From the sequence record MF360958.1: a stretch of 64,000 bases of DNA; one strand, 5' to 3'. Within the stretch, counting starts at the first letter, position 1; every line of letters begins with the position of its first letter. The notes beneath the pieces are model-generated. The model was not told the origin of the DNA. It saw only the letters and a program-made list of their open reading frames with translations, and ran no database searches. This document shows, piece by piece, positions 1,582-47,960 of the stretch. Position numbers and translations under genes: made by a program.

Positions 1582-2724
1582 ATGTCTAATATGAAAAATT
1601 ATTTAAAACTTTTAGAAAACACAGAAAATAATGAATTTGAAAATCATTATGATGATTCTTTCAAGGTAAATGAACAAGATGGTACATTCTACATAGTAGG
1701 TGAAAATACTGGTGATGTATACGCAAGTTATAATGATAAAGAAGACGCTGACCTCCGTTGTGAAAATATGAATAAAATTGGTTATTCAAATATTGACAAC
1801 GATACACTTGTAAATGAAGATAAAGATAAATCAAATTCTTCTTATAACAACACTATTCGGAAGAAAAATCGAAAAGTAAATGAAGAATATGAAGATGAAA
1901 TGGATGTTGATGATGAAATGGATGTTGATGATGAAATGGATGTTGATGATGAACTCGATAATGAAATGTCTATGGAAGAACCTATGGATTCTGATCGAAT
2001 TAAAACAGATTTCGACACCATTGATTATGAAGATTCCGAATTAAATATTGATACAGAAGACTCCCAAGAAGATGATCTAATGTATAATTATACAGCAACT
2101 ATTCAACTTCATGGTTATAATTATCCGTTAGTTCTTAATTCTGATGATATTGATGAATTTAAAACAGTTATGAAAGTTCTTCGTCAAAGCGGTCTTAATC
2201 CTGAAGGAGAATATAAATGGAATAGCCGCACATTTACTTTAGATACTGATGATGAAACTATTACAGAAAGTGAAGAAGGTGGTCCTATCGAATCAAGTAA
2301 AATGCATAAAGATCTTGATGTTTCTGACAAGATGAAGAAAAAGTCTGATGTGAAATATGATAAATCAGATATTGGTATGGACGGTTATGAGAACGGTTCT
2401 GAAGAAGAAGTTTACGATCCTTCACGTAATGTTCCGACTGATAAACAGAATCGTACTATCAAACACAAAGACGTTTCAAAGGATCGTAAGATTGAAGATC
2501 CTATGAAACCTGACGAACCTAGTAACTATGATACTGTCGAAGGTGGTCAAGACATTTTTGATAATACTGATGAAATGGATGTTTTCAAAACTGGTAATGA
2601 AGGTGATGAAAGTGGTAGAATTGATTATGAAGCTACTGATCAGGAAATCCGTGATATTCTTAAAATGAGCGGGCAGCTTGATTATAATAAATCAGATCAA
2701 GGTGAAAATCTCTCAGGAGAATAA
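1582..2724 (+). CDS. very acidic late protein, putative scaffold or internal head protein
   Basis: D/E-rich; N-terminus MSNMKNYLKLLENTE; several [LVI]-x-E sites. Confidence 0.55.
   Translation: MSNMKNYLKLLENTENNEFENHYDDSFKVNEQDGTFYIVGENTGDVYASYNDKEDADLRCENMNKIGYSNIDNDTLVNEDKDKSNSSYNNTIRKKNRKVNEEYEDEMDVDDEMDVDDEMDVDDELDNEMSMEEPMDSDRIKTDFDTIDYEDSELNIDTEDSQEDDLMYNYTATIQLHGYNYPLVLNSDDIDEFKTVMKVLRQSGLNPEGEYKWNSRTFTLDTDDETITESEEGGPIESSKMHKDLDVSDKMKKKSDVKYDKSDIGMDGYENGSEEEVYDPSRNVPTDKQNRTIKHKDVSKDRKIEDPMKPDEPSNYDTVEGGQDIFDNTDEMDVFKTGNEGDESGRIDYEATDQEIRDILKMSGQLDYNKSDQGENLSGE
1894..1953 (+). repeat. 18-bp tandem repeat x3 (GATGAAATGGATGTTGAT; DEMDVD)
   Basis: Three exact copies plus a partial, in frame within the CDS. 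Confidence 0.95.
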
Positions 2725-19669: not shown

Positions 19670-19697
19670 AAAAGCCCCTCAAATGAGGGGCTTTTTT
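19670..19697 (+). terminator. intrinsic terminator
   Basis: AAAAGCCCCTC-AAAT-GAGGGGCTTTTTT; same sequence recurs at 25467. Confidence 0.9.
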
Positions 19698-19763
19698 ATG
19701 TCTTTACATAAGTTAAGATTGTCATATTATTGAATAATATAGATAAGACTAATAGGAGGTAAA

Positions 19764-20033: not shown

Positions 20034-20110
20034 ATGCAATGACCTGATTTGACTCAAAACATATTTGCATGATAGACTTGATAAAACTTGTATTAATTAT
20101 GGAGCAAATT

Positions 20111-20704
20111 ATGTATAAATCAATAGCATCTATTCAGTTCCCAGAATATCGTGGTGGTATTAATATCAATATGATGCCTATTGTTTTTGGGTATCCTGAA
20201 ACATATCCTGAAACTATTAAAGGTTATATTCCTCTTATTAATCAATGCAATTTCAATATTGGTGAAATTTGTTACATTACGATCAGTGAAAGCTTTGTAC
20301 CTAAGGATCAGTCTCAGCGTCGTGGCGGTATTCATGTTGAAGCGCCTTATCTGAAATCATGGGGTGGTGGAACTTGGGGTGGTATGACCCGTGATAAAGG
20401 TATTTATATGGCTTCTACTGATGGTAATACCAATGTTTGGGATGAAATTGTAGGAGATCGTGACGAACATGGTGCCTGTGTCCCTTATGGAAATCCTGAA
20501 AAAATGACTCCTAATATTCTTTACTGGATGACTGACAAAACGCCACATCAAGCATTGCCTAGTGATCGTGATTGTTATCGTCAATTTTTTAGGTTAGTAT
20601 CAAGTGAAATTTCCATGTGGCTTTCAAAGCATAATACAAAAAATCCATACGGTGTTAAACCTACGTGTCCAGTTGTTGATATTGATAAGTTTGAGAAGGT
20701 ATAA
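20111..20704 (+). CDS. hypothetical protein, possible 2OG-Fe(II)/double-stranded beta-helix fold
   Basis: RRGGIHVE...MTDKTPHQALP...RQFFRL; GGAG RBS before ATG 20111. Confidence 0.45.
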   Translation: MYKSIASIQFPEYRGGININMMPIVFGYPETYPETIKGYIPLINQCNFNIGEICYITISESFVPKDQSQRRGGIHVEAPYLKSWGGGTWGGMTRDKGIYMASTDGNTNVWDEIVGDRDEHGACVPYGNPEKMTPNILYWMTDKTPHQALPSDRDCYRQFFRLVSSEISMWLSKHNTKNPYGVKPTCPVVDIDKFEKV

Positions 20705-20707
20705 AGC

Positions 20708-21325
20708 ATGAATTCTCAATTTTTATCTATATTAGAAAATGAAATAATAGAAAATCCAAAAAGTATACTTTTACATAAATCTTTATCAGGAGAATATTGG
20801 GATTTAGCAATACAATGTGATTATACTATATGGGATTATATGGAGAATCCATCATATGAGGTACTTGATTATTTGGTGGATATTTATCCATATCAAGTAG
20901 CGTGTAGGTTTAGTCATTTAATGGATGAGCAATTGTGTAAAAAAGCGGTATGTAATCATCCTGCTTCTATTAGTTTTATTGAAAATCCTAGTGAAGATTT
21001 ACAAATTATGGCAGTTCAAAATAATTTGTATGCTATTGAAAATATTAGGGTAGATTTAACTGAAAAGGCAAGGTTTGAAGCTGTAAAACATCATCCTAGT
21101 TCTATTTTATCTATTAAGAATAAAAATATATCAATTGAATTAATGATGGTTGCGCTAGACCATTGTTGGGTGAAAAGTTTATACTTATTTTTAAAAAATA
21201 AAATGAATATTGATTATCATGAACATGATGAGTTTAGAAAACAGTTCAATAAGTTATGGCTGAAAAATGGGCCATTATATAATGACATAAAATATAATAA
21301 ATTTAATGGTGCAACTTGGGTATAA
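20708..21325 (+). CDS. NPS-repeat (DUF4116-like) paralog family protein
   Basis: IENPSEDLQIMAV repeats; C-terminal NKLWLKNGP. Confidence 0.8.
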   Translation: MNSQFLSILENEIIENPKSILLHKSLSGEYWDLAIQCDYTIWDYMENPSYEVLDYLVDIYPYQVACRFSHLMDEQLCKKAVCNHPASISFIENPSEDLQIMAVQNNLYAIENIRVDLTEKARFEAVKHHPSSILSIKNKNISIELMMVALDHCWVKSLYLFLKNKMNIDYHEHDEFRKQFNKLWLKNGPLYNDIKYNKFNGATWV

Positions 21326-21330
21326 AAATT

Positions 21331-21945
21331 ATGGGAAAAATACGTGATATTGAATTAAATAGATTTCCTTATAAAATATTGGAAATAGAAAATCCTAGCA
21401 CGCATCAATGGTATCTTGCTTTGTGTAAAGAACCCTATTTGCTTGAATATAATCAAAATCCTAGTTTTGTATTGCTTGAAAGGATGTGTAAAGAAAAGCC
21501 TCATATAATGATTAGAGATTATCATCATCTATTATCTGAAGATCAAAAAATGACAGCAATATATCATAATCCGGTTATGATTAGTGCTATTGACAATCCT
21601 GATGAAAAAATTCAATTATATGCTGTAATGTTGTCTTCTTATGCTATAACCGGTATTAAAAATCCATCAGAGAAAATTTTGTTACAAGCTGTTAAACATT
21701 GGCCTGATAGTATACTGCGTATTAAAAATAGAAACATTACTAAAGAAATGATATTAATTGCTTTAGAAAAGCGCTGGGATAAGAATTTTTTAGATAGGAT
21801 TGAGAAAAAACTAAGACTAAAACATATTCCAAAAGATCATTGGTTTAAATATGAATTGAAAAAACTTAAAGTAAAAAATGGTCCAATGAGTGATAATCAT
21901 GTTTATTACATAAAATATAAAAATGGTGGCGGAATTGACACATAA
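21331..21945 (+). CDS. NPS-repeat paralog family protein
   Basis: IKNPSEKILLQAV repeats; C-terminal KKLKVKNGP. Confidence 0.8.
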   Translation: MGKIRDIELNRFPYKILEIENPSTHQWYLALCKEPYLLEYNQNPSFVLLERMCKEKPHIMIRDYHHLLSEDQKMTAIYHNPVMISAIDNPDEKIQLYAVMLSSYAITGIKNPSEKILLQAVKHWPDSILRIKNRNITKEMILIALEKRWDKNFLDRIEKKLRLKHIPKDHWFKYELKKLKVKNGPMSDNHVYYIKYKNGGGIDT

Positions 21946-22441
21946 ATGGTATAATAAAGAAAAAGCAATTGATAAAGATAGGGTAGAAATTAATGGAGAT
22001 TATATAAAGAATTATAAAAATCCTAGTGAAAAATTACAACTAATTGCTGTTCAAGAGAATGGTTTAAGTATACGTTTTATCAAAAATCCTACTAAAAAAG
22101 TGAAATATAAAGCTGTAGAAAATCATGAAGCTGCTATTGGTTGGATTGATAATCCTAGTAAAGAGTTACAATTATATGCTATTAAACATTCAATATTAGC
22201 ATTACAATGGATTAAAAATCCTTATTATTGTGTGAAATATAATGCAATATTACAAGATTGTTATGCAATTAAATATTTACAATCTCTTGAAGATGAATTA
22301 CAACTTTTAGCACTTCAGTATTGTCATAATAAAGATAAAAAAGATATCTATAATTTCATTATTCATTTTTACACACGTGATAATGAAGAACGATTTAATC
22401 ATCAAGTTAAAAAATTAAAACTAAAGTACGGGCCTTTTTAA
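21923..22441 (+). CDS. NPS-repeat paralog family protein
   Basis: IDNPSKELQLYAI repeats; C-terminal KKLKLKYGPF. Confidence 0.8.
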   Translation: MVAELTHKWYNKEKAIDKDRVEINGDYIKNYKNPSEKLQLIAVQENGLSIRFIKNPTKKVKYKAVENHEAAIGWIDNPSKELQLYAIKHSILALQWIKNPYYCVKYNAILQDCYAIKYLQSLEDELQLLALQYCHNKDKKDIYNFIIHFYTRDNEERFNHQVKKLKLKYGPF

Positions 22442-22498
22442 TGAATATATTTTAACAAGGATATAAAAAATTGCAATTAAAACATAGAGTTATAAATA

Positions 22499-22909
22499 AT
22501 GACAAAACCAATAATATCTAACAAAGATCTGAATTCAGTCATACATGAAACTTATAGAAAAATACCCCGAAGTGAAATTGTGGAAAATATTTTAGCTAAT
22601 CCATATAATATACAATACGTAGATGATCCTGATGAGCAATTACAAAATATCGCCGTATGTGATAATGGATATGCTATACAATTTATTAAAAATCCTTCAG
22701 AACAAATAATTATTGAAGCTATTGATAACGAACCGCAAAGTATAAAATATCTTGATTATCCTTCTGATAATATTCAATTAAGAGCTATTGAGCATATATG
22801 GAGAATATCATTTTATGATATGATGATGAAAATATTTTCTCGGGATGATGAAGAAAAATTTAATCATGATATTAATAAAATGAAGATAAAGTACGGTCCA
22901 ATGGGTTAA
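22499..22909 (+). CDS. NPS-repeat paralog family protein
   Basis: IKNPSEQIIIEAI repeats; C-terminal NKMKIKYGPM. Confidence 0.8.
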   Translation: MTKPIISNKDLNSVIHETYRKIPRSEIVENILANPYNIQYVDDPDEQLQNIAVCDNGYAIQFIKNPSEQIIIEAIDNEPQSIKYLDYPSDNIQLRAIEHIWRISFYDMMMKIFSRDDEEKFNHDINKMKIKYGPMG

Positions 22910-22919
22910 TTAGGTAGAT

Positions 22920-23720
22920 ATGAGCACAACAAAAAATACTAATAAGAAAGTAACTAAGATCAGTGATTTTTATATTCAAGGTGATCGAATAGGATTTAGA
23001 AATAAACAAAAAGATAATGATACAATTGATTATCGTTTCATGGTTCAGATTAGATGGGAATCAAGCAGAGATTGCATGGGTAGAAATTGTGGGGATGGTC
23101 CTTGTCGATGTGAAGAAATTGAAGAAACATGGATTGAAGATGATCAAGCTGAATTATTTTCTGGTGTTTATCTAAGTGTTTTAAATGCTATCAAGACAAA
23201 AAATTTAACGACCAATCGTAAGGTAAAAGCTGATCAATTTTTAAACACTATTCATAAGTATTGTATTGAGCGTTTATGTGTTCATCATAATGTGCATAAT
23301 AAAGATCTGTATGATATTGATGTTGTAGGTGGTTATTACGGTCAGGAAATTGGTTCAGTAACCTTTGAGAATCAAAAAGAATTAAACGATGATATTTTAT
23401 ACATTCTCAATACATGTAAGAATGATATCGAACGAATTAAATTTATATTGGAAAAAGAGTATGCGTATCTTTTAGACAGTATTGAAAATGTTACACAGTG
23501 TGATATAGAGTATTTTAATGTTAAAGATATTGCGAAAAATAGTATAGAACTAACACGTATTAAAAATAATGACAATGAATATTTTATTGAGCTTGATCCT
23601 AAAAGTATGCCTATAGGAATTATTCACAATAATGTTCTTATTGATGGTCATAATCGTACTAAAAAAATACTAGGGGATATTGACACAAATAAAGAATGTT
23701 GCTATATTGTACTAAGTTAA
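22920..23720 (+). CDS. hypothetical protein with Cys cluster and ParB/Srx-like motif
   Basis: CxxxxCxxxxCRC near the N-terminus; VLIDGHNR near the C-terminus. Confidence 0.5.
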   Translation: MSTTKNTNKKVTKISDFYIQGDRIGFRNKQKDNDTIDYRFMVQIRWESSRDCMGRNCGDGPCRCEEIEETWIEDDQAELFSGVYLSVLNAIKTKNLTTNRKVKADQFLNTIHKYCIERLCVHHNVHNKDLYDIDVVGGYYGQEIGSVTFENQKELNDDILYILNTCKNDIERIKFILEKEYAYLLDSIENVTQCDIEYFNVKDIAKNSIELTRIKNNDNEYFIELDPKSMPIGIIHNNVLIDGHNRTKKILGDIDTNKECCYIVLS

Positions 23721-23737
23721 TTTAAAGGAGAAACACT

Positions 23738-23977
23738 ATGAGTTCTGGTGCAGAATTTCTTGTTGGTAATTATTACGAAGTTGTTGGCCTTGGAGTAATG
23801 GATGGTGATGAAACATGCACTGCTACTTCCACACAACCTACAGGATATGTTCGTCATCCTGATTGGGATGAAATGATTCCTGTGAACCTCAACTACTTCG
23901 GGGAAGGTGAAGTTGGTGAGTTCGCCGTTTACCTTGGATACGACAAGAAAAGGCATAGTCTTTCCTACGAAATGTAA
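23738..23977 (+). CDS. hypothetical protein
   Basis: AAGGAG RBS, 79 aa. Confidence 0.75.
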   Translation: MSSGAEFLVGNYYEVVGLGVMDGDETCTATSTQPTGYVRHPDWDEMIPVNLNYFGEGEVGEFAVYLGYDKKRHSLSYEM

Positions 23978-24057
23978 ACATACCATTCTCCTATATTGTT
24001 CAAATAATATAAATACTATTAGAATAATTAACAGAATATTATAGGATAAAGTTTATA

Positions 24058-24798
24058 ATGAGTATTAAGTGGAATAATGTAAAACAACAAGGTCAATCCA
24101 AAGTAAAGAAAGCAAGCCCTACAGTCGATCTAGGTATTGGTCCTACCGAACTGATAGCGGGTGACATGCAAGCAGGATTTTTCGGAGAGGTTTTAGCTTC
24201 CGAACTATTCACCGGTCCTGAACTAGCTAGTGAAATCAATCTCACAGCAGGTATAGCTCAATATGACAATGAACCATGGCTAAAGTTTGCTTATAAGGGA
24301 GAGATCCTATATGTAGCTAAGAAACCTTACAGACACACCGTTTCTTGGGATGATATACAAGCAGTAGATGCGGTATATGGTGGAGAAAATGATGCGGAAG
24401 TAGGTAAGTCAGGCTATAATTTTAAAGTACGTTTACTAAAAGGTGCTAGTAACGATCCTACCAGTTGGGATGACTCGGGTACTGATGATGAAGGAGCTAG
24501 TAATTCAAGATATGATCCTGTTGAAAGTATTGGATCTGAATGGAATAATTTAATTTATAAAGTTCATGAGTACAGCCCTGTTAACCAAGAAGGTTCAAAT
24601 TGGGCAAATTATACTGATAGTGATATTGTAGTGGGTAGTGGAGATGGTAGAGTTACATGGTGTCAAGAAACACCTAGCTACGATACTTCAAGACGTGTTC
24701 ACCGTGGTAATTCTTCCTTGTCTTACTTCATTACCCCTACCTCGTCTTATTCCCCTTCTATTTGCGGCTGGCGTCCATGCTTAACACTGATCACGTGA
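24058..24798 (+). CDS. putative virion protein with C-type-lectin-like fold; candidate DGR target
   Basis: GPTELIAGD...WLKFAYKG...VSWDDI...SEWN...WCQE...RVHRG...GWRP; late promoter TATAAATA at 24008-24015. Confidence 0.7.
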   Translation: MSIKWNNVKQQGQSKVKKASPTVDLGIGPTELIAGDMQAGFFGEVLASELFTGPELASEINLTAGIAQYDNEPWLKFAYKGEILYVAKKPYRHTVSWDDIQAVDAVYGGENDAEVGKSGYNFKVRLLKGASNDPTSWDDSGTDDEGASNSRYDPVESIGSEWNNLIYKVHEYSPVNQEGSNWANYTDSDIVVGSGDGRVTWCQETPSYDTSRRVHRGNSSLSYFITPTSSYSPSICGWRPCLTLIT

Positions 24799-24877
24799 TC
24801 GCTATCAAGCGCCGATTAAGTCCGAACGAAGGTGAGGATAGGCACTTCTTGCTAAACTTTACTATGTAATATTGTTA

Positions 24878-24910
24878 ATGGGTTAGGTTTTGAGCCTAAC
24901 CCATCGTTTT
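24878..24910 (+). terminator. intrinsic terminator hairpin
   Basis: ATGGGTTAGG-TTTTGAG-CCTAACCCAT followed by CGTTTT. Confidence 0.7.
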
Positions 24911-24997
24911 ATATAATAATTCTAAAAATAAAAGTTGAGTTTTATCCTTTAATATGCTATTATACTTAATATAATCAGCAATAAAGGATAAAACATT

Positions 24998-25465
24998 ATG
25001 ACCACACGAAACCTTAACCGCCTTCTTTCAAAAGCTATTCGAATTGCTTCACAAGCACATGAAGAACAGCTTGATAAAGGTAATTCACCTTATATCCTGC
25101 ATCCAATGCGCATCATGTTCCGTCTTAGAACAGACGACCCTGAACTTAACATGATTGCTATGCTTCATGATGTGATGGAAGATACTCAATGGACACTGGA
25201 TGATTTTATTAATGAAGGCTTCACTGATCGTGTTCTGAATGCTCTAAGGCTTCTTACACACAATAAAGATCATGTTGCCTATGAAGATTATATCGAAAAC
25301 ATGTGCGATAATCTTGATGCTGTTAAAGTGAAAATGGGAGATCTCAAGGATAACTCAGATATCACACGGCTTAAAGGTGTGACTGATAAGGATATTGAAA
25401 GGATGAAGAAATACCATAAATCGTATCTTCGCCTTGACGAAGCTAAAGAAAAACTGGAAGGATAA
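24998..25465 (+). CDS. HD-domain hydrolase (SpoT/Mesh1-like (p)ppGpp hydrolase family)
   Basis: AHEEQLDKGNSPYILHP...AMLHDVMED...KVKMGDLKDN. Confidence 0.85.
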   Translation: MTTRNLNRLLSKAIRIASQAHEEQLDKGNSPYILHPMRIMFRLRTDDPELNMIAMLHDVMEDTQWTLDDFINEGFTDRVLNALRLLTHNKDHVAYEDYIENMCDNLDAVKVKMGDLKDNSDITRLKGVTDKDIERMKKYHKSYLRLDEAKEKLEG

Positions 25466-25466
25466 T

Positions 25467-25495
25467 AAAAAGCCCCTCAAATGAGGGGCTTTTTT
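25467..25495. terminator. bidirectional intrinsic terminator
   Basis: AAAAAGCCCCTCAAATGAGGGGCTTTTTT between convergent genes. Confidence 0.9.
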
Positions 25496-25500
25496 ATAGG

Positions 25501-25746
25501 TTATGAATTTAGTTCTGTGACATCAGCCTCTTGGGCACGAATGATCGTTGCGTATTTGAAATAATGTTTATATTTTTGATACACGTTATTAAAAGTCATC
25601 ACCTTACTTAAACCACCTTCATTGATTGCCATATTTGATCGATGGTATAAGCTAAAACCAATTCGTGACATTTCGCTTGAAAAATCTTCATGAACACGGT
25701 TTCGTGTTTCTTCATCTTTATATTCAAAGTAGATTAGTGTTTTCAT
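25501..25746 (-). CDS. hypothetical protein
   Basis: 81-aa ORF directly downstream of the CheW-like gene, GGAG RBS. Confidence 0.7.
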   Translation of the reverse strand: MKTLIYFEYKDEETRNRVHEDFSSEMSRIGFSLYHRSNMAINEGGLSKVMTFNNVYQKYKHYFKYATIIRAQEADVTELNS

Positions 25747-25756
25747 ATATCAACTC

Positions 25757-26176
25757 CTATAGGTCATGTAGTTCATCAATGTTGACAACATTATACAGAC
25801 CCTCGTTATGTTTTACAACACTAGTGATAATGTTGGTATAGTTGGGTTTAAAGAATACTTTTGAGTATTGTTCTATTTCATCTTCATCAATACTTATTAT
25901 ATCGTTAACCTTTTCAACAATCAATCCTAACAATGTTTCATGGGTATTTTCTGTAATAATGACCATCCCATTTTGAATTTGATTTTGAGCAAAAAACTTG
26001 GAAAGATTGCATAACCCAATAGGGGTTTGCCTGAAATAAGTTATTCCTTCAACAAACCATGGACTACCCGGTGCCTCGGCAATGGTTAAATCTTCAAATT
26101 CTTTAATTTCACAAATATTTTGTATATTAATTGCAAATTGTTGATCGCTGATAGTAAATGTTAAAAATTGTATCAT
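25757..26176 (-). CDS. cheW: CheW-like chemotaxis coupling protein
   Basis: QFLTFTISDQQFAINIQNICEI...PGSPWFVEGITYFRQ...LGLIVEKVNDII. Confidence 0.75.
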   Translation of the reverse strand: MIQFLTFTISDQQFAINIQNICEIKEFEDLTIAEAPGSPWFVEGITYFRQTPIGLCNLSKFFAQNQIQNGMVIITENTHETLLGLIVEKVNDIISIDEDEIEQYSKVFFKPNYTNIITSVVKHNEGLYNVVNIDELHDL

Positions 26177-27705: not shown

Positions 27706-27790
27706 GGGGATGTGGTGGAAAGGGTATACACGAGAATCTCAAAAATTCTTGGCTTCGGCTATCCCGGTTCAAGTCCGGGCATCCCCACCA
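27706..27790 (+). tRNA. trnL: tRNA-Leu(CAA)
   Basis: Acceptor GGGGATG/CATCCCC, anticodon arm AGAAT-CTCAAAA-ATTCT, long variable arm, TTCAAGT T-loop, encoded CCA. Confidence 0.95.
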
Positions 27791-28796: not shown

Positions 28797-28881
28797 GCGG
28801 GTATGGTGGAAATGGTAGACACTGGGGTCTTAAAAACCCTTGCTTTTTAGCGTGCCGGTTCAAGTCCGGCTACCCGCACCA
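28797..28881 (+). tRNA. trnL: tRNA-Leu(TAA)
   Basis: Acceptor GCGGGTA/TACCCGC, anticodon arm GGGGT-CTTAAAA-ACCCT, long variable arm, encoded CCA. Confidence 0.95.
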
Positions 28882-39087: not shown

Positions 39088-39102
39088 AAAAAATAGTAGA
39101 AA

Positions 39103-39203
39103 GGGTGTTGACGAGGACATTATTTATAGATATAATGTTTACAGAATTTGAGGAAAAGCCCTCAAAGACACCTAAACTAAAATTGTACAGGAGATTGAAA
39201 ATG
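39103..39203 (+). promoter_or_regulatory. early promoter plus 5' leader module, copy 1
   Basis: TTGACG(39108)-17 nt-TATAAT(39131), hairpin TTTGAGG/CCTCAAA, AGGAG RBS; about 90% identical to 47861-47960. Confidence 0.9.
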
Positions 39204-39482
39204 ACTAACGAAACTACTACTCAAACCCAAACCGCTACTCGTCGTGGTCGTCCGCTGTCCACCAAGGGCCGTAAGGCACGTAATGCAGTACTGAAAGCTC
39301 TGAACAGCGAGCAAGGTGCTCAAGGCGTCACTGCTAAGGACATTGCACGTCAAGGTAAGATGAGTGCTACAGCGGTGCGTAACCGCCTCAATGCACTGGA
39401 ACGTGCTGGTGAAGTGGTTAAGGTCGGTGTACGCAACACTGATGGTCGTGGCCGTCCTCAAGCTGTCTACGTCAAAGCATAA
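39201..39482 (+). CDS. winged-helix DNA-binding protein with two RGRP (AT-hook-like) motifs
   Basis: RRGRP...TAKDIARQGKMSATAVRNRLNALERAGEV...GRGRPQAVY; GC-rich relative to the window. Confidence 0.8.
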   Translation: MTNETTTQTQTATRRGRPLSTKGRKARNAVLKALNSEQGAQGVTAKDIARQGKMSATAVRNRLNALERAGEVVKVGVRNTDGRGRPQAVYVKA

Positions 39483-39557: not shown

Positions 39558-40025
39558 TTATGTCCAAAAACCCGCATCAACTGTACCGGGATCAACAGCT
39601 ATACCCCATATACGATCATTGTTGGTTTCATATTTCCATAACTCATTGCCTGTACTATCTAATTTCCGTACTGTGTTATCTCTGCTACCACTATAAACAT
39701 TACCATTTTGATCCACCGCTACTGATTCAACACTACTAGTATGTTTGCTAAAGACCCATAATTCGCTACCTGAACTATCTATTTTTCGTACTGTATTGTC
39801 ATCAGAACCACTATAAACATTACCTTCGATATCTACTGCTAATGCTCTAACACTATCAGTATGATTACTAAAGGCCCATAATTCGTTACCTAAACTATCT
39901 ATTTTATAGACCGAATTATTGTCATATCCTGTTGCATACACATTAGGATTCTCAATAATATTACTAGGTGCTTTTTTCACTTTAAATTGTCCCCTAAATG
40001 GTATACCATTCATTTTTAGTCCCAT
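39558..40025 (-). CDS. small beta-propeller (WD40/PQQ-like) repeat protein
   Basis: Three about 40-aa repeats VYSGSxDNTVRK[IL]DSxG[NS]ELWxF...VAVD; AATAAATA at 40054-40061 (minus). Confidence 0.85.
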   Translation of the reverse strand: MGLKMNGIPFRGQFKVKKAPSNIIENPNVYATGYDNNSVYKIDSLGNELWAFSNHTDSVRALAVDIEGNVYSGSDDNTVRKIDSSGSELWVFSKHTSSVESVAVDQNGNVYSGSRDNTVRKLDSTGNELWKYETNNDRIWGIAVDPGTVDAGFWT

Positions 40026-42774: not shown

Positions 42775-43563
42775 ATGAAAAATTATACGATTAATGAATT
42801 ATTTGATGATCCTGATTTAATAGCAGAAATTGATAATCCTAGCGAGCAACAACAACTTGCTGCGGTATATGCAAATCCTAGAACTTTGTTTTTAATCAAA
42901 GATCCACCAGATAGTGTGACGTATTCAGCCGTTGATAAAGATGGATCTATTATCTCCGAAATAGAAAACCCGCCGTTTCGCTGTCAACTTTCTGCGATTC
43001 GTCAAGATCCGACATATTTTCTATTGATTGATAATCCTCATGAGCTTATTAAAGAAGAAATTGTTTCAGAACATGATCACGGGATAGGATGGATTAAAAA
43101 TCCATCTAAAAAATTAAAGTTGAAAGCAGTAGAAAAAAATCATAGAGCATTGAAGTATATTAAAGATGCGGATTATGATATACAATATTATGCAATAGCG
43201 CATAACGGCTTTGCTATTAAATACTGTGATAATCCTTCAGAAGAATTACAATTTATTGCTATTCGAGATCGTGTTGAAAGTATACATTATATTCAAAATC
43301 CTACGTATAATGTCATTTATGAATGTGTACAAAATTATCCTGATTATCTTCACACAACGGGTCTTGGTGCATTAGTTAGACAAAAAATCGATGAAGATAT
43401 TCTTTTAGCAGCTATTGAAGCGTCATGGTATGCAGATTGCGTTTTTTATGATAAAATGATGTTTCATTTTGGTAGTAATATAACTGACCAAGACTACTTT
43501 TATAGAGAAATCAAAAAGTTAAAAGTAAAATATGGTCCTATGAATTGCACTATGAAAATTTGA
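42775..43563 (+). CDS. NPS-repeat paralog family protein
   Basis: About nine NPS/NPP repeats; C-terminal KKLKVKYGPM. Confidence 0.8.
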   Translation: MKNYTINELFDDPDLIAEIDNPSEQQQLAAVYANPRTLFLIKDPPDSVTYSAVDKDGSIISEIENPPFRCQLSAIRQDPTYFLLIDNPHELIKEEIVSEHDHGIGWIKNPSKKLKLKAVEKNHRALKYIKDADYDIQYYAIAHNGFAIKYCDNPSEELQFIAIRDRVESIHYIQNPTYNVIYECVQNYPDYLHTTGLGALVRQKIDEDILLAAIEASWYADCVFYDKMMFHFGSNITDQDYFYREIKKLKVKYGPMNCTMKI

Positions 43564-43574
43564 GGTTAAAACTA

Positions 43575-44036
43575 ATGAAAAAATTACTTATTATTGTCCT
43601 AATAATGTTGCCCAATATTGTTTATGCTGAATTTAATCTTTCAGCAGGATCTTGGGTGGAAGATAAAAAAGAAACCTTTAATTTATCATTAGGCGCGTGG
43701 TCAAAACATGTTCTAAGCAATGATATTTCTAATGAAACTCATAATATGATAGCAGTACAAAAAAGCAGAATAATGGGTGGTTATTTTAAAAATAGTCATG
43801 GAAATGATACGTTTTTTATTAATTATTATAGAGAATTTGAAATAACAAAAAATATAGAACCATTTGTAACATTTGGCCTGATGTATGGTTATACAGAATG
43901 CTTTGGAGAAGATAATAGCTCAAAAGATGTTTGCCCTATGGGTGTTATTGGTGTATCATATACAAAATTTCGCATTGAGCCTACTTTATATTTATTAGGT
44001 GATGCGATTAGTTTTGGTCCACGAATTAAATTTTAG
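43575..44036 (+). CDS. putative outer-membrane beta-barrel protein
   Basis: Signal peptide, alternating beta-strand pattern, GAWSKH...NETH...GYFKNSH, terminal Phe. Confidence 0.55.
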   Translation: MKKLLIIVLIMLPNIVYAEFNLSAGSWVEDKKETFNLSLGAWSKHVLSNDISNETHNMIAVQKSRIMGGYFKNSHGNDTFFINYYREFEITKNIEPFVTFGLMYGYTECFGEDNSSKDVCPMGVIGVSYTKFRIEPTLYLLGDAISFGPRIKF

Positions 44037-44044
44037 GAGGAAAA

Positions 44045-44698
44045 ATGGCACATAAATCGCAATGTTTTTTAAAATGTAAAACCGGTCAATGTGTTTGTCA
44101 TCATTATTCTTCAATGAATAATTTTTTAAAAACTGTTGAACAGCGGTTTTCTCAACCAATAGTGACGTATATGGAAGATCGTTTTGAACAAGAGCAAAAT
44201 GGTAATTATGATCAAAAAGAACGCTTTTTTCAATCGAACAAACAATTCAATAAATCTTTTCAAGGTGCTTCTTTAATTTCTTCAGAAATGTTTGATCAGC
44301 AACTGAAAATGGTTAAGCTTAATATAAATATGCGGTTTTTGTTAAAAAATGCACATAACAGTGATAGTTATTCTGCATTAGCACGTTATTTTGCACAATA
44401 TGCATTCTATGCACAAAAGATCAATCGTATGGGTAAAAATTCTTCCCATAACTTTATCATTGACTTCACAAAGAATAGTGAATTTTTAACATATAACTAT
44501 TTTGATTTTCTTTTCAGTACTATTGAAGGAATGCATGAGATGATTAAACAACGTATGACGATTCATCCTGAACAATATGTTAGATATCAAAACGATCCAT
44601 CTATTTATCTTGATATGGATAAAGATAAAGTTAAAAATGTTTATAAAACTGAATTAGCGGATTTGAAAGATAAAGATAAACAACCAATTAAAAACTAA
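44045..44698 (+). CDS. hypothetical protein
   Basis: AGGAGG RBS; N-terminal Cys cluster. Confidence 0.75.
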   Translation: MAHKSQCFLKCKTGQCVCHHYSSMNNFLKTVEQRFSQPIVTYMEDRFEQEQNGNYDQKERFFQSNKQFNKSFQGASLISSEMFDQQLKMVKLNINMRFLLKNAHNSDSYSALARYFAQYAFYAQKINRMGKNSSHNFIIDFTKNSEFLTYNYFDFLFSTIEGMHEMIKQRMTIHPEQYVRYQNDPSIYLDMDKDKVKNVYKTELADLKDKDKQPIKN

Positions 44699-44699
44699 T

Positions 44700-45101
44700 A
44701 TGGTTACGTTAACAAATAATCGCATAATGAAAATTAATCAAATGACAGATGATGAAAAAATTCAATATATTTTTACTCATAATAGAGTAAGCCTTGTTGA
44801 GTACATCACAGAACCATCTCAATACTTTCAAATGGAAATTGTTAAAAGGATGCCTTCATTGGTTATTTTTTTACAAGATCCTATTGAAGAAGTTCAAATT
44901 TATGCTGTAAAGGAGAATGGATTCATTTTAGAGTATATTGAAGAACCTAGCGATAATGTTCAGTTAGAAGCATTAAAACATAAATGGATTGATAAAATTT
45001 ATCATCATATCCTAAAGAATTGCAAACAAGAAAATAAAAAATTCTTTAATAAAGAACTTAATAAATTAAAACTATTAAATGGTGCTCTTAGAGAAATATA
45101 A
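44700..45101 (+). CDS. NPS-repeat paralog family protein
   Basis: IEEPSDNVQLEAL repeats; C-terminal NKLKLLNGA. Confidence 0.8.
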   Translation: MVTLTNNRIMKINQMTDDEKIQYIFTHNRVSLVEYITEPSQYFQMEIVKRMPSLVIFLQDPIEEVQIYAVKENGFILEYIEEPSDNVQLEALKHKWIDKIYHHILKNCKQENKKFFNKELNKLKLLNGALREI

Positions 45102-45104
45102 AAT

Positions 45105-45815
45105 ATGTTAACTATTGATGAAATTAAAGATATTGAAAATAATCCAGAAAAACTTAAATCATTTGATGATGACAAGTTAAAAGTTTGTATTCTTAATGCT
45201 CCCCAATTATTTCCATTAATGGAAAATCCTTCTTATGATGTATGTGTTTTTGCTGTTGTTACTTATCCTTATCTTATAAAAGAGATCTCTAATCCTAGTA
45301 TAAAATTAATAGAAGAATGCGTGATAAATTCACCATTATCACTTCAATTTTTTACAGAAGATCAAATTAATAATATTAATCATGATGTTTTGCTAAGAGC
45401 TGTTGAAAAAAGAGATAATACTATAAGACATATCCCAAATCCTAGTAAAGAACTCCAAATGCTTTCTGTTGAAAGTAAAGGAACTAATATTTCATATATT
45501 GATAATCCATATGAGGACGTTTGTATACAAGCAGTTAAAACATCACCAGTTAGTATTCGATATATTAAAAATCCATCCAGAGATGCTAAATTATTAGCCG
45601 TAAAATTATCAGGCGTTGCATTACAATTTATTGATTTTCCTGATGATGAAATGCAAATTGAAGCTCTTAAAAGTCATTGGTTTGAAGAATTTTACTATGA
45701 AATTTTAGAAAATTGTATAAGAACAGATCCTGAAGGTTTCTTTAAATCTGTTAAAAAATTAAAACTGGAAAAAGGACCAATGAAATCCTATGTAGATTTT
45801 GAAGATGATGATTAA
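45105..45815 (+). CDS. NPS-repeat paralog family protein
   Basis: IPNPSKELQMLSV repeats; C-terminal KKLKLEKGPM. Confidence 0.8.
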   Translation: MLTIDEIKDIENNPEKLKSFDDDKLKVCILNAPQLFPLMENPSYDVCVFAVVTYPYLIKEISNPSIKLIEECVINSPLSLQFFTEDQINNINHDVLLRAVEKRDNTIRHIPNPSKELQMLSVESKGTNISYIDNPYEDVCIQAVKTSPVSIRYIKNPSRDAKLLAVKLSGVALQFIDFPDDEMQIEALKSHWFEEFYYEILENCIRTDPEGFFKSVKKLKLEKGPMKSYVDFEDDD

Positions 45816-45878
45816 AGATTGAAATAACGTAACGAACTGTGTATACTATTTAACTCATAATCGAAAGGAGAGATTAAT

Positions 45879-46307
45879 ATGAATGCTAAAATTGTTCTAT
45901 CCATTATTGGTGTTATCGTATCAGTTGCGGTAATTCTGAGCGCAACGTGGCTTGTACGATATTACACAGCAGAGCCTAAAGGTGTTGTTAAAACTGAAGA
46001 ACAACTCCAAAGTGCTCAAAGTCGAATCAGCCGTTATGAACGGTTCTTTGATCTTTGTACGACTGTTCAATCACAAAAAGCAGCCCTCCAAGCTCAAAAA
46101 GAGCGACTGGATACAGCAACTAATGAGGATACGAAAGAACGTATTCATGCTAATATTGCTGGACTTAAAGCACAGCTTCAACGCACTGTATCTATGTATA
46201 ATAATGATAGTAATACTTATACGTCTGGACAATTTAAAGACAGTAAACTTCCAGTTCGCCTTTCAGTAGATGGACAAACACAATGTATTGTTGATTATCG
46301 CCAATAA
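45879..46307 (+). CDS. membrane-anchored coiled-coil protein
   Basis: N-terminal TM helix, then a coiled-coil-like region; AAAGGAG RBS. Confidence 0.75.
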   Translation: MNAKIVLSIIGVIVSVAVILSATWLVRYYTAEPKGVVKTEEQLQSAQSRISRYERFFDLCTTVQSQKAALQAQKERLDTATNEDTKERIHANIAGLKAQLQRTVSMYNNDSNTYTSGQFKDSKLPVRLSVDGQTQCIVDYRQ

Positions 46308-46376
46308 TTCATATATAATAGACTTTGTTTTGAGAAACTAAACTAGAAACTAACCCACAAACTAGAGGATTAAACT

Positions 46377-46904
46377 ATGAAAAAATTTAAAACTATTGTG
46401 ACAATGATGATCATCGCTATGGCTCTTGTCGTTGCGGGTTGTAATAAAGATACAACTTCAGAAAAACAGGAAGAAGTACGTGATGATGTTCTTACCCGAG
46501 CAAACAATGCTGAGCCTCCGTATAAGCCTAGTAATTTCCTTGTACGTCAATATGTCAATGAATATATGAAACGGCTGGATAACCCTAATAAAACTTGGTA
46601 TATCTATCTACTTGGAGATAACGGTAACCATATTGGTTATTATGTTGCACGTAGTCATCCTGTGAATATTTGTACATTCCTAACGCCTCCTGACAAAATT
46701 GAAGGTATGGGTGATAGTCGTAGGGTACGTAAAGCACCCGCTCTTGATGGAGCATACTATGGTGGTGGTGCTTGTAATAAAGAATATTTCTTCACAGCAA
46801 GTACTGATGCTCTTATGTCTGTGCCTACACATATGAAGAAAATTGTTTCAGATCAACCTCTGGAAATTGATGTGGAACAAATTAAAGTACAGATCCAGAA
46901 GTAA
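46377..46904 (+). CDS. lipoprotein
   Basis: Lipobox VVAG-C after a hydrophobic signal. Confidence 0.8.
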   Translation: MKKFKTIVTMMIIAMALVVAGCNKDTTSEKQEEVRDDVLTRANNAEPPYKPSNFLVRQYVNEYMKRLDNPNKTWYIYLLGDNGNHIGYYVARSHPVNICTFLTPPDKIEGMGDSRRVRKAPALDGAYYGGGACNKEYFFTASTDALMSVPTHMKKIVSDQPLEIDVEQIKVQIQK

Positions 46905-46917
46905 AAGAGTAAACTTT

Positions 46918-46950
46918 AAAAACTTGGGCATAAATCATGCCCAAGTTTTT
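46918..46950 (+). terminator. intrinsic terminator
   Basis: AAAAACTTGGGCAT-AAATC-ATGCCCAAGTTTTT. Confidence 0.8.
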
Positions 46951-46968
46951 ACTATTAAGGGATGTATA

Positions 46969-47688
46969 ATGTTTAAAAAAATACTTTATTTTCATTTTAT
47001 GGTAGTTATTGGGTGTTGTCCAAAAATTCTAAAATTGTTTAAACAACCACTCAGTGATGAACTACAACTCTATCTTATTAAAAAGTGTTCTTTTACTATC
47101 AAATATATGAAAGCACCATGTAGTGCTGTGCAATGGTATATTTTTAATCAATTAGATATAAATCATCTCTATTATATTGATAATGTGGATGAAGATTTAC
47201 AAGAACATTTGGTTAATATTGACTATTCATTAATTAAATATATAAAATATCCAAAAGAAGAACTTCAAATAAAAGTTTTAGAACAAACAATTACTAATCT
47301 TTGTTTTATAAACTATCCTTGTTTTAAAGCTCAAGAATTAGTAATGAATATTTATCCGGCTTTTTTATCCATTATTAGTGAAAAAGTACGTTATGAAGAA
47401 ATCGAACTAATGGCTGTTAGAAAAGATGGCAACCTATTATGTTGTTGTAGTTTTCAAACATCTAAAATATGCCGCGAAGCTGTTAATAATACTGGCTATG
47501 CATATTATTATATTAAACATCCAACTCAAGAAGAAGCATTATTAGCATTATCTAATTGTTGGGAAAAAAATCTATACCATAAAGTTGTTGAAGATATGTT
47601 TAATCATGAATCCAAGATACCGAGTGTATGGTTTAAACGCGAATTCAACAAGCTGAAACTTAAAAATGGAGCATTTGATAATGAGTAA
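46969..47688 (+). CDS. NPS-repeat paralog family protein (divergent)
   Basis: IKYPKEELQIKVL repeats; C-terminal NKLKLKNGA; start moved to ATG 46969. Confidence 0.75.
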   Translation: MFKKILYFHFMVVIGCCPKILKLFKQPLSDELQLYLIKKCSFTIKYMKAPCSAVQWYIFNQLDINHLYYIDNVDEDLQEHLVNIDYSLIKYIKYPKEELQIKVLEQTITNLCFINYPCFKAQELVMNIYPAFLSIISEKVRYEEIELMAVRKDGNLLCCCSFQTSKICREAVNNTGYAYYYIKHPTQEEALLALSNCWEKNLYHKVVEDMFNHESKIPSVWFKREFNKLKLKNGAFDNE

Positions 47689-47846: not shown

Positions 47847-47860
47847 GAAATTTTTATAGT

Positions 47861-47960
47861 GGGTGTTGACGAAGGTATTATATATAGATATAATGTTTAC
47901 AGAATTTGAGGGAAAACTCTCAAAACATCTAAACTAAAATTGTATAGGAGATTGAAAATG
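47861..47960 (+). promoter_or_regulatory. early promoter plus 5' leader module, copy 2
   Basis: TTGACG(47866)-17 nt-TATAAT(47889), hairpin TTTGAGGG/CTCTCAAA, AGGAG RBS. Confidence 0.9.

What the first reader, a model, noticed from the sequence alone, without database searches (positions are those of the whole stretch)
24691..24798. DGR-like variable region in a CLec-type virion gene, with template and RT outside the window
Seen: the gene ends RVHRG-NSSLSYFITPTSSYSPSIC-GWRP. Of the 19 codons between RG and GWRP (24709-24765), 17 end in C/T, two are TTG/TCG and none ends in A, unlike the rest of this AT-rich window. Known: DGR targets often have CLec folds ending in G[FW]RP, and their variable codons are NNY because they derive from AAY template codons by adenine mutagenesis. 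Inference: a jumbo-phage adhesin diversified in trans by a remote DGR, or a relic of one. By-eye scanning found no template repeat or reverse transcriptase in this window.
Basis: partly seen in the sequence, partly recalled or inferred. Interest (0 to 1): 0.85.

Follow-up and report, generated by a model that had tools for sequence, protein, structure and literature searches.

The report
Orphan DGR target genes, jumbo phage
Three scattered copies of a virion-type protein gene in the 440-kb Salicola phage SCTP-2 carry the mutational footprint of a diversity-generating retroelement, yet the whole phage genome holds no template, reverse transcriptase or accessory gene, so the sites are either fossils of a lost system or are rewritten from outside the phage.

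Summary
Seventeen of the 19 codons at 24709-24765 end in C/T and none ends in A (gene body 55% and 34%; p=0.0016).

The window is the last 64 kb of Salicola phage SCTP-2 (MF360958.1). The gene is gene 486. It has two paralogs elsewhere in the genome, genes 434 and 82.

The three copies differ at third codon positions in the gene body. In the 78 nt at 24700-24777 they differ at first and second positions of 11 codons. All 33 variable codon instances are NNY. These codons coincide with the Asn codons of the templates used by relatives. In IMG/VR, 15 of 80 loci carrying a relative have a canonical cassette of target, Avd, TR and RT, with TR-VR mismatches almost all at template adenines.

A roughly 75-nt stretch after the variable region, 54 nt of it noncoding, is 95-97% identical in all three copies. 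The gene bodies differ by 13-15%.

SCTP-2 itself has no TR, RT or Avd anywhere in its 440 kb. No matching template was found in public genomes, viromes or metagenomes.

Best reading: these are DGR variable regions orphaned by loss of the cassette. A trans-acting DGR from outside the phage is not excluded. The C-type-lectin fold has only weak support.

The parts
24058..24798 (+). Gene 486 of Salicola phage SCTP-2 (ASV44501.1, 246 aa, annotated hypothetical). It belongs to the phiKZ-like 'virion structural protein' family (PHROG 1062/16120). Its paralogs lie outside the window: gene 434 (record 345633-346373, minus strand, 84% aa identity) and gene 82 (record 66673-67410, minus strand, 83%).
24130..24795 (+). 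Conserved globular domain, residues ~25-246. The AlphaFold2 model is confident. It matches phiKZ-like virion structural proteins strongly and TvpA/FGE-type C-type-lectin folds only weakly.
   Evidence: (mean pLDDT 91.2)
24598..24852 (+). Block of low divergence among the three paralogs. It has 0-4 variable columns per 30 nt outside the hypervariable codons, against 2-13 upstream and 11-26 downstream. This is the stretch that was homogenised or held constant at the DNA level.
24700..24777 (+). Variable region. The three paralogs differ at 23 columns here. Eighteen of these are first or second positions of 11 codons, and every one of the 33 variable codon instances ends in C/T. The scaffold codons between them are free of adenine or invariant, synonymous sites included.
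24766..24776 (+). G+C-rich stretch encoding GWRP (GGCTGGCGTCC), at the 3' limit of the adenine-type variation. It sits where TR-VR homology ends in relatives with cassettes, so it is an IMH-like start. That is inferred, because no TR exists here to define it.
   Evidence: features per PMC5758913
24778..24852 (+). Conserved 3' element: the last 6 codons, the stop (24796-24798) and 54 noncoding nt. It is about 50% G+C. Pairwise differences are 2-4 of 75, against 13-15% in the gene body and 13% (g486 vs g434) or ~55% (either vs g82) in the next 78 nt.
24779..24810 (+). 32-nt imperfect palindrome (16-nt arms, 75% complementary, central 12 nt GATCACGTGATC perfect). It spans the stop codon and is identical in all three paralogs.
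24807..24847 (+). G+C-rich inverted repeat AAGCGCC ... GGCGCTT. It is intact in genes 434 and 82 and interrupted in gene 486 by an A at 24844. Predicted folding is no better than for shuffled sequence.
24878..24912 (+). Terminator-like hairpin (10-bp perfect stem, 7-nt loop, followed by a T run). It is shared with gene 434 but not gene 82.

Best explanation
Gene 486 and its paralogs 434 and 82 are target genes of a diversity-generating retroelement (DGR). At some time a reverse transcriptase copied a template repeat, misincorporating opposite template adenines, and the cDNA overwrote the last ~80-100 nt of the coding sequence of each gene. This randomised 11 codons of a ligand-binding surface and left the adenine-free scaffold codons untouched. 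The G+C-rich GWRP stretch and the conserved palindromic element after it served as the target-recognition end. The deposited SCTP-2 genome no longer carries the template, the RT or the Avd protein. The three variable regions are therefore most likely frozen: a hard-wired set of three binding specificities on a virion protein, left behind when the cassette was lost. Shown: the codon-level footprint, the three-copy comparison, family membership, and the absence of TR, RT and Avd. Inferred: that retrohoming produced the pattern, that the 3' element is the recognition site, that the proteins sit on the virion and bind host surface ligands, and that the cassette was lost rather than kept elsewhere.
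For: (1) Among the three paralogs the gene body varies mainly at third positions (76 third-position columns against 53 first/second). Gene nt 643-720 reverse this (5 against 18; Fisher p=0.0012).
(2) All 33 variable codon instances are NNY and encode only amino acids reachable from AAY by changing adenines. Body NNY frequency is 0.55.
(3) Fourteen of the 18 first/second-position variable columns keep an A in at least one copy.
(4) In 11 readable templates from IMG/VR relatives (a twelfth row was mis-framed), the share with an AA-start codon is 0.72 at the SCTP-2 variable codons and 0.01 at its invariant codons (Mann-Whitney p=6e-5).
(5) The family is a genuine DGR target family. Fifteen of 80 IMG/VR loci have target, Avd, TR (~570 nt downstream) and RT, with TR-VR mismatches almost all at template A: 10/10, 14/14, 17/18, 18/19.
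(6) One template serving dispersed paralogs occurs in a related 150-kb phage contig.
(7) The variable-region scaffold and the noncoding 3' element are far less diverged than the rest of the genes: third positions vary at 5/33 columns against 76/212 (p=0.018), and the 3' element differs at 2-4 of 75 positions against 13-15% in the body.
(8) Non-DGR homologs lack the bias.
(9) Absence of the machinery. Adenine-tolerant patterns and a sequence-only model at E<=10 find only the three variable regions in all 440 kb. Profile HMMs of 14 RTs and 12 Avds find nothing better than E~0.35, while controls score 1e-41 to 1e-171. A similarity-free search for Asn-rich stretches before G[WF]R finds the templates of control loci and none in SCTP-2.
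(10) A 416-kb metagenomic relative of SCTP-2 has a family paralog plus a DGR-clade RT in a 5.4-kb block between two genes that are directly adjacent in SCTP-2.
(11) Signs of age. Gene 486 carries three private C/T changes at synonymous sites inside the variable region, and a fourth synonymous C/T difference, private to gene 434, also separates the copies; adenine mutagenesis cannot make any of these. Gene 486 also has an A that breaks the G+C-rich inverted repeat.
Against: No template exists to align, so the defining TR-VR comparison cannot be made for SCTP-2 itself. The strong conservation of 54 noncoding nt in three dispersed copies is hard to explain if the system has long been dead. It argues for recent loss, continued use or another function. 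Whether the record is truly complete cannot be checked, and no reads are available. The host genome (Salicola sp. PV4) could not be examined. The public-collection searches were exact-pattern scans that a few substitutions would defeat. Two related large-phage contigs also show variable regions, or an RT, without a nearby template. That hints that remote or unusual templates may be normal in this group. The predicted structure of the 3' element is not better than chance.
Confidence: 0.6

Rival explanations
1. The DGR is alive but lies outside the deposited phage sequence. The template and RT would sit in the host chromosome, a plasmid or prophage, a satellite or co-infecting phage, or a segment missing from the assembly. 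They would rewrite the three phage genes in trans during infection.
For: The 75-nt 3' element, 54 nt of it noncoding, is kept at 95-97% identity in three copies that are 54 to 278 kb apart. Adjacent flanks differ by 13-55%. That is what selection for a shared recognition site would give. Genes 434 and 82 differ at only one non-adenine site in the variable region. Trans action on dispersed targets is a known DGR property (PMC5758913) and is seen in a related phage contig. A 220.6-kb contig has five co-scaffold variable regions, a shared 3' element of at least 115 nt and an Avd, but no RT or template in the ~100 kb seen.
Against: No RT, Avd or template is present in 440 kb. Exact scaffold patterns found nothing in 185,579 species genomes, IMG/VR or JGI metagenomes. 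A host has no evident reason to keep a template that serves a lytic phage. Phage DGR targets are reported to lie nearly always within 50 kb of the RT (PMC5758913). Gene 486 shows three to four non-adenine differences and a broken inverted repeat, so it at least has not been rewritten recently.
Confidence: 0.25
2. No retroelement was ever involved in this lineage. The pattern comes from ordinary diversifying selection on ligand-contacting residues, with gene conversion among paralogs keeping the 3' end uniform.
For: The variable positions are where ligand-binding residues of this domain lie in all relatives, so selection alone would also concentrate change there. Gene conversion can homogenise paralog ends. 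No template is available to prove retrohoming.
Against: Selection acts on amino acids, not on codon third bases. Here 33 of 33 variable codons end in C/T and none encodes K, E, Q, M or W, in a genome with 30% G+C. Scaffold residues use adenine-free codons. A content is 0.12-0.19 against 0.33. Non-DGR homologs under presumably similar selection show none of this. Gene conversion would erase the differences at the 11 codons, not spare exactly them.
Confidence: 0.07
3. The conserved 3' element is not a DGR recognition site. It would be an independent cis element, such as a protein-binding palindrome, a transcript-end or stability signal, or a small RNA, that travels with this gene family in SCTP-2.
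For: The element contains a perfect 12-nt palindrome with a CACGTG core and spans the stop codon. In genes 486 and 434 a terminator hairpin follows it. The boundaries of conservation are sharp and identical in all three copies.
Against: No Rfam family matches. Folding energy is no better than for shuffles as DNA or RNA. The pattern occurs nowhere else in the genome or in public metagenomes. It begins exactly where adenine-type variation stops, the place of IMH and its inverted repeat in known DGRs. A different but equally long conserved element follows the co-scaffold variable regions of another large phage.
Confidence: 0.15

Closest known systems
Canonical phage DGR cassettes next to members of the same protein family (IMG/VR loci L018, L022, L024, L027, L031, L054 and others)
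   Same: The target domain is homologous (36-50% aa identity). The variable region sits at the same C-terminal place: 19 codons between RG and GWRP. The same codons are variable. The G+C-rich GWRP stretch marks the 3' limit.
   Different: Those loci have Avd, a template ~570 nt downstream and an RT. SCTP-2 has none of the three anywhere.
Bordetella phage BPP-1 DGR (mtd, avd, TR, brt)
   Same: A C-terminal variable region in a virion protein, Asn-codon-based variation at first and second positions, a G+C-rich end followed by an inverted repeat (features as summarised in PMC5758913). The RT used here as a probe finds BPP-1 Brt at 2e-12. Three of 40 family members carry the Mtd_N domain.
   Different: There is no sequence similarity between gene 486 and Mtd by the tools used. 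BPP-1 has one adjacent target. SCTP-2 has three targets spread over hundreds of kb and no cassette.
Treponema denticola TvpA and its multi-target DGR
   Same: TvpA (2y3c) is the best solved-structure match to the gene 486 model, followed by FGE-type folds. The Treponema element serves seven non-adjacent targets from one template (PMC5758913).
   Different: The fold match is weak (E 3.8e-3, TM 0.27). The Treponema system is cellular and complete.
phiKZ-like virion structural protein paralogs (201phi2-1 gp452/gp456, phiKZ gp83, PhiPA3 gp082, EL gp155; PHROG 1062/16120)
   Same: The same domain, with strong sequence and fold matches, several paralogs per jumbo-phage genome, and a GWRP end. 201phi2-1 gp452 is annotated as found in virions by mass spectrometry.
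   Different: These homologs show no NNY bias or adenine depletion in the equivalent stretch, and their records annotate no DGR.

Membership tests
Diversity-generating retroelement (DGR) | A reverse transcriptase of the DGR clade encoded in the same replicon | tested here: not met
   tblastn with a DGR-clade RT gave best E 0.83. A profile HMM of 14 RTs against all stop-to-stop segments of at least 40 aa of the 440 kb gave best E 1, with controls at 7e-87 to 3e-171. No RT is annotated in the record.
Diversity-generating retroelement (DGR) | A template repeat that matches the variable region except at template adenines | tested here: not met
   Adenine-tolerant scan of the window. IUPAC patterns over the whole record. 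A sequence-only covariance model at E<=10 found only the three variable regions. A similarity-free Asn-rich scan. Nothing in genome contigs, viral contigs or metagenome contigs.
Diversity-generating retroelement (DGR) | A variable region in a target gene, with variation confined to first and second positions of AAY-type codons and adenine-free scaffold codons | tested here: met
   Comparison of three paralogs: 18 of 23 variable columns are at positions 1-2 in 11 codons, Fisher p=0.0012. All 33 variable codon instances are NNY and AAY-reachable. NNY is 17/19 in each copy.
Diversity-generating retroelement (DGR) | The target protein is homologous to targets of complete DGRs, with variable codons at the template's Asn codons | tested here: met
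   Fifteen of 80 loci carrying a relative have a full cassette with A-specific mismatches. Positional coincidence is 0.72 against 0.01, p=6e-5.
Diversity-generating retroelement (DGR) | An accessory variability determinant (Avd) or equivalent | tested here: not met
   A profile HMM of 12 Avds gave best E 0.35, with controls at 6e-41 and 1e-60. tblastn gave best E 2.6.
Diversity-generating retroelement (DGR) | An IMH at the 3' end of the variable region, followed by a G+C-rich inverted repeat | tested here: inconclusive
   A G+C-rich stretch sits at the 3' limit of variation. A 75-nt element conserved in all three copies holds a 32-nt imperfect palindrome and an AAGCGCC/GGCGCTT repeat. Without a template the IMH cannot be delimited, and folding is not better than chance.
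Diversity-generating retroelement (DGR) | Ongoing diversification (population heterogeneity at template-adenine positions) | not testable with these tools
   No reads are available. Each of the three proteins is a single-member cluster seen on one contig.
C-type lectin / FGE-type fold DGR variable proteins | A CLec (FGE-subtype) fold with the variable residues on one face | tested here: inconclusive
   The AF2 model has pLDDT 91. The Foldseek PDB top hit is TvpA, then PvdO, CarF, PorK and FGEs, but with E 3.8e-3 to 0.9 and TM 0.22-0.34. There is no Pfam FGE-sulfatase hit and no PDB sequence hit.
phiKZ-like virion structural protein family (PHROG 1062/16120/3589) | Sequence and fold homology across the domain | tested here: met
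   PHROG E 3.5e-47, 8.9e-37 and 1.7e-21. tblastn to 183 phage records. BFVD Foldseek E 1e-21 to 1e-6 with TM up to 0.77.
phiKZ-like virion structural protein family (PHROG 1062/16120/3589) | Presence of the protein in the virion | not testable with these tools
   Known only for a homolog: 201phi2-1 gp452 is annotated as identified by mass spectrometry.

The most novel reading that the evidence does not exclude
A cultured jumbo phage keeps three dispersed, recognition-competent DGR targets that are rewritten by a template and reverse transcriptase carried outside its own genome, by the host, a satellite or a co-infecting element. This would be a split DGR in which the virus owns only the targets. 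The recurrence of 'many variable regions, no nearby template' in two other large-phage contigs would then be a regular architecture of this group.
Probability: 0.15. Interest if true: 0.85.

Novelty: new variant of a known kind. Interest (0 to 1): 0.55.

Why it matters
DGR surveys start from the reverse transcriptase, so genomes that hold only targets are invisible to them. Here a complete, cultured 440-kb phage shows a clear DGR footprint in three genes 54 to 278 kb apart, with none of the machinery. If the footprint is a relic, it captures the step by which a hypermutating receptor-binding module becomes a fixed set of paralogs. That would link the large, unexplained 'virion structural protein' paralog families of phiKZ-like jumbo phages to DGR target domains. 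A comparative study of 224 jumbo phages reported finding no FGS-type lectin domains in them (PMC7824862). If it is not a relic, it would be the first phage whose DGR targets depend on a template supplied from elsewhere. The literature expects that not to occur for phage-associated DGRs (PMC5758913). Either way, the paralog-comparison test used here detects DGR history without a template.

Tried and rejected
1. Intron or structured-RNA reading. The homolog profiles are longer than gene 486, and the region after the stop is G+C-rich, so I tested this. Rfam gave nothing at gathering or at E<=10, and the gene is full length relative to its paralogs. Rejected.

2. One of the three copies acting as the template. 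None carries adenines at all variable columns. Rejected.

3. A template elsewhere in the genome. Not found by blastn, by adenine-tolerant scans, by IUPAC patterns, by a covariance model or by an Asn-rich motif scan. The '3 places' reported were the three paralogs.

4. Template, or close relatives, in public data. Four exact-pattern scans returned zero hits. These scans tolerate no substitutions, so the negative is weak.

5. Gene 487 downstream as an Avd. It is an HD-domain phosphohydrolase. Rejected.

6. A sequence-level link to FGE/CLec or Mtd. None by Pfam or PDB sequence search.

7. A significant secondary structure for the 3' element. z-scores ran from +0.9 to -1.6. Not supported.

8. I first thought loci L002-L009 were unavailable to scripts. 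They are stored in multi-record files. All genome-wide scans were run piece by piece without joining the pieces.

9. The template of the RT in the 416-kb relative, and of the five-paralog 220.6-kb contig. Not found in the stretches available. Left unexplained.

That is an inferred sequence. The searches used only degenerate patterns with N or union codes at the variable columns.

Full report
**Identity of the window**

Window 23000-26000 is 100% identical to Salicola phage SCTP-2, MF360958.1. This is a 440,001-bp linear record from a solar saltern, with host Salicola sp. PV4. Window position equals record position minus 376,001, so the window is the last 64 kb of the record. The finding lies in gene 486 (window 24058-24798, + strand, 246 aa, annotated hypothetical). 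I fetched the rest of the record in overlapping pieces. Every genome-wide scan was run piece by piece.

**The observation**

The gene ends ...RRVHRG, then 19 residues, then GWRPCLTLIT*. Of the 19 codons at 24709-24765, 17 end in C/T, two end in G and none ends in A. In the gene's other codons 55% are NNY and 34% end in A, giving p=0.0016.

**The decisive new fact: three paralogs**

A protein search found two paralogs in the same phage: gene 434 (record 345633-346373, minus strand, 84% identity) and gene 82 (record 66673-67410, minus strand, 83%). Their spacing is as follows:
- Genes 434 and 486 are about 54 kb apart.
- Genes 82 and 434 are about 278 kb apart.
- Genes 486 and 82 are about 106 kb apart across the record ends.

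In the DNA alignment the gene bodies differ by 12.7-15.5%, mostly at third codon positions (76 third-position columns against 53 first/second). In gene nt 643-720 (window 24700-24777) the pattern inverts. Eighteen of 23 variable columns are first or second positions, confined to 11 codons (Fisher p=0.0012).

Further features of those codons:
- All 33 instances of the variable codons end in C/T.
- They encode only amino acids reachable from AAY by changing adenines. None encodes K, E, Q, M or W, although the genome has 30% G+C.
- Fourteen of the 18 first/second-position columns retain an A in at least one copy.
- The scaffold codons between them are identical, synonymous sites included. Third positions vary at 5 of 33 codons here against 76 of 212 in the body (p=0.018).

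This is the signature expected when several targets are repeatedly overwritten from one template with adenine-specific errors.

**The 3' element**

From the GWRP codons onward, the last 6 codons, the stop and 54 noncoding nt (window 24778-24852) differ at only 2-4 of 75 positions between copies. The next 78 nt differ by 13% between genes 486 and 434. Gene 82 is unrelated there, at about 55% difference. The element is about 50% G+C in a 30% genome. It contains:
- a 32-nt imperfect palindrome across the stop codon;
- a G+C-rich inverted repeat that is intact in genes 434 and 82 and interrupted in gene 486 by an A at 24844.

Its position matches that of the IMH and inverted repeat of known DGRs, as summarised by Wu et al. 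(PMC5758913). However, predicted folding is no better than for shuffled sequence, and no Rfam family matches.

**The family is a real DGR target family**

About 290 metagenomic homologs end with the same module: W[CV]QE ... R.RG, about 19 variable residues, GWRP.L.L. Among 80 IMG/VR loci encoding relatives, 15 have a canonical cassette. It consists of the homolog, an Avd gene, a second copy of the C-terminal stretch about 570 nt downstream, and an RT. The mismatches lie almost entirely at adenines of the second copy: 10/10, 14/14, 17/18, 18/19.

I aligned the 23 codons before GWRP. The share of those templates with an AA-start codon is 0.72 at the SCTP-2 variable codons and 0.01 at its invariant codons (p=6e-5). 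One of the 12 rows in that script was mis-framed.

In a related 150-kb contig, the template next to one paralog also matches the variable region of a paralog about 85 kb away and one on a second contig. One template serving dispersed paralogs therefore occurs in this group.

Homologs in phiKZ-like phages, whose annotation shows no DGR, lack the NNY bias and the adenine depletion.

**The machinery is absent from SCTP-2**

No fourth copy of the repeat exists. The following searches returned only the three variable regions or nothing:
- blastn at word size 7 and an adenine-tolerant scan of the window;
- adenine-tolerant and union-code IUPAC patterns over the whole record;
- a sequence-only covariance model at E<=10 over 463 kb of pieces;
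- a similarity-free scan for Asn-rich stretches before G[WF]R, which does recover the templates of control loci.

An RT taken from beside a homolog finds Bordetella phage BPP-1 Brt at 2e-12 in the phage collection but nothing in SCTP-2. Profile HMMs of 14 RTs and 12 Avds find nothing better than E 0.35-1 in any stop-to-stop segment of at least 40 aa. Unused control loci score 1e-41 to 1e-171.

Exact scaffold patterns with N at the variable columns returned nothing from 185,579 species genomes, IMG/VR or JGI metagenomes. Such scans would miss a template with even one scaffold change. The host strain's genome was not identifiable in what I could search.

**Relatives that bear on loss versus trans supply**

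A 416-kb ENA contig is a true relative of SCTP-2. Amino-acid identities are UvsX-like 55%, gp32-like 44%, gp13-like 45% and NUDIX 59%. It carries a family paralog, a DGR-clade RT and an HNH gene in a 5.4-kb block between the gp13-like and NUDIX genes. In SCTP-2 those two genes (266 and 265) are adjacent, with a 10-nt spacer. The lineage therefore has, or had, such RTs, and SCTP-2 shows an empty site. Even there, no template lies within 10 kb of the RT.

A 220.6-kb IMG/VR contig has five paralogs with one shared scaffold, a shared G+C-rich 3' element of at least 115 nt with hairpins, and an Avd. It has no RT or template in the roughly 100 kb available. These cases keep the trans reading alive.

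**Fold and likely role**

The AlphaFold2 model is confident (mean pLDDT 91.2). Against BFVD it matches phiKZ-like virion structural proteins (E 1e-21 to 1e-6). One homolog, 201phi2-1 gp452, is annotated as found in virions by mass spectrometry. In a small siphophage contig a homolog sits in the tail module.

Against the PDB, the top match is the DGR variable protein TvpA, followed only by FGE-type folds. The scores are weak (E 3.8e-3, TM 0.27), and there is no sequence-level link. The lectin-fold claim is therefore plausible but not established.

A comparative study of 224 jumbo phages that included SCTP-2 reported finding no FGS-type lectin domains in them (PMC7824862).

**Weighing the explanations**

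That a DGR produced these variable regions I hold at about 0.9. On the present state:
- **Relic.** The absence of all three components, the empty site, three synonymous C/T changes private to gene 486 inside its variable region (plus one private to gene 434), and gene 486's broken inverted repeat all point to an orphaned, frozen set. I put this at about 0.6.
- **Trans supply or incomplete record.** The tight conservation of the noncoding element, and the near-identity of the scaffolds of genes 434 and 82, point to recent or continuing use. I put supply from outside the phage, or an incomplete record, at about 0.25.
- **No DGR.** An origin without any retroelement is unlikely, at about 0.07.

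**Novelty**

The kind of system is well known. The state seen here does not appear in the papers I could read: three dispersed targets with recognition-type ends in a complete cultured jumbo-phage genome that has no RT, template or Avd. I class it as a new variant of a known kind, of moderate interest. It would be of high interest if the trans reading proved true.

In my private reasoning I spelled out the codon series that a template would need.

Noticed in passing
L013:9181-15770 (ENA ERZ23877871 NODE_3, 415,949 bp) against SCTP-2 record 255165-256371: A 416-kb metagenomic relative of SCTP-2 has a 5.4-kb block between gp13-like and NUDIX genes. The block holds a family paralog, a 277-aa DGR-clade RT, small ORFs and an HNH endonuclease. 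In SCTP-2 the two flanking genes are adjacent. No template lies within 10 kb of that RT.
   Followed up: partly
IMGVR_UViG_3300037502_002993 (220,598 bp): L021, L034, L036, L059, L079, L015: Five paralogs share one variable-region scaffold. Three of them also share a near-identical G+C-rich element of at least 115 nt with hairpins after the stop codon. An Avd gene follows one paralog, but no RT or template was found in the ~100 kb available.
   Followed up: partly
L010:5854-6978 (protein P0005): A 374-aa protein in a siphophage tail module carries two variable-region-like modules in tandem. Their scaffold DNA is conserved and the differences sit at the variable codons. No template is present on the 11.7-kb contig.
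   Followed up: partly
window 19670-19699 and 25468-25497 (also 14287, 33109, 39528): A family of terminator-like hairpins. Two copies are 100% identical over 30 nt, and one of them ends gene 487.
   Followed up: no
window 20069-22909 and 43090-47200: A run of paralogous genes (genes 479-483) shares a ~38-45-nt repeat unit with further genes 20 kb downstream. The family matches PHROG 5925, of unknown function.
   Followed up: no
window 27706-27790 and 28797-28881: Two tRNA-Leu genes (anticodons CAA and TAA) lie inside a 92-nt repeat that is 73% identical. Only the second reaches the Rfam gathering score.
   Followed up: no
window 39090-39225 and 47848-47982: A promoter-plus-leader-like repeat (77 nt at 83% and 61 nt at 80% identity, with TTGACG ... 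TATAAT) runs into the start codons of two genes.
   Followed up: no
window 55969-57957: A 662-aa ORF lies in a 42.5% G+C island in a ~30% G+C window and has no Pfam match. It may have been acquired from elsewhere.
   Followed up: partly
window 24998-25465 and 54385-55740: Gene 487, just downstream of the finding, is an HD-domain phosphohydrolase (PHROG 990), not an Avd. The ORF at 54385-55740 is an ATP-dependent DNA ligase.
   Followed up: yes
window 1890-1961 and 39636-39875: An 18-nt tandem repeat encodes an acidic D/E-rich stretch, and there is a 120-nt tandem pair (74% identical).
   Followed up: no
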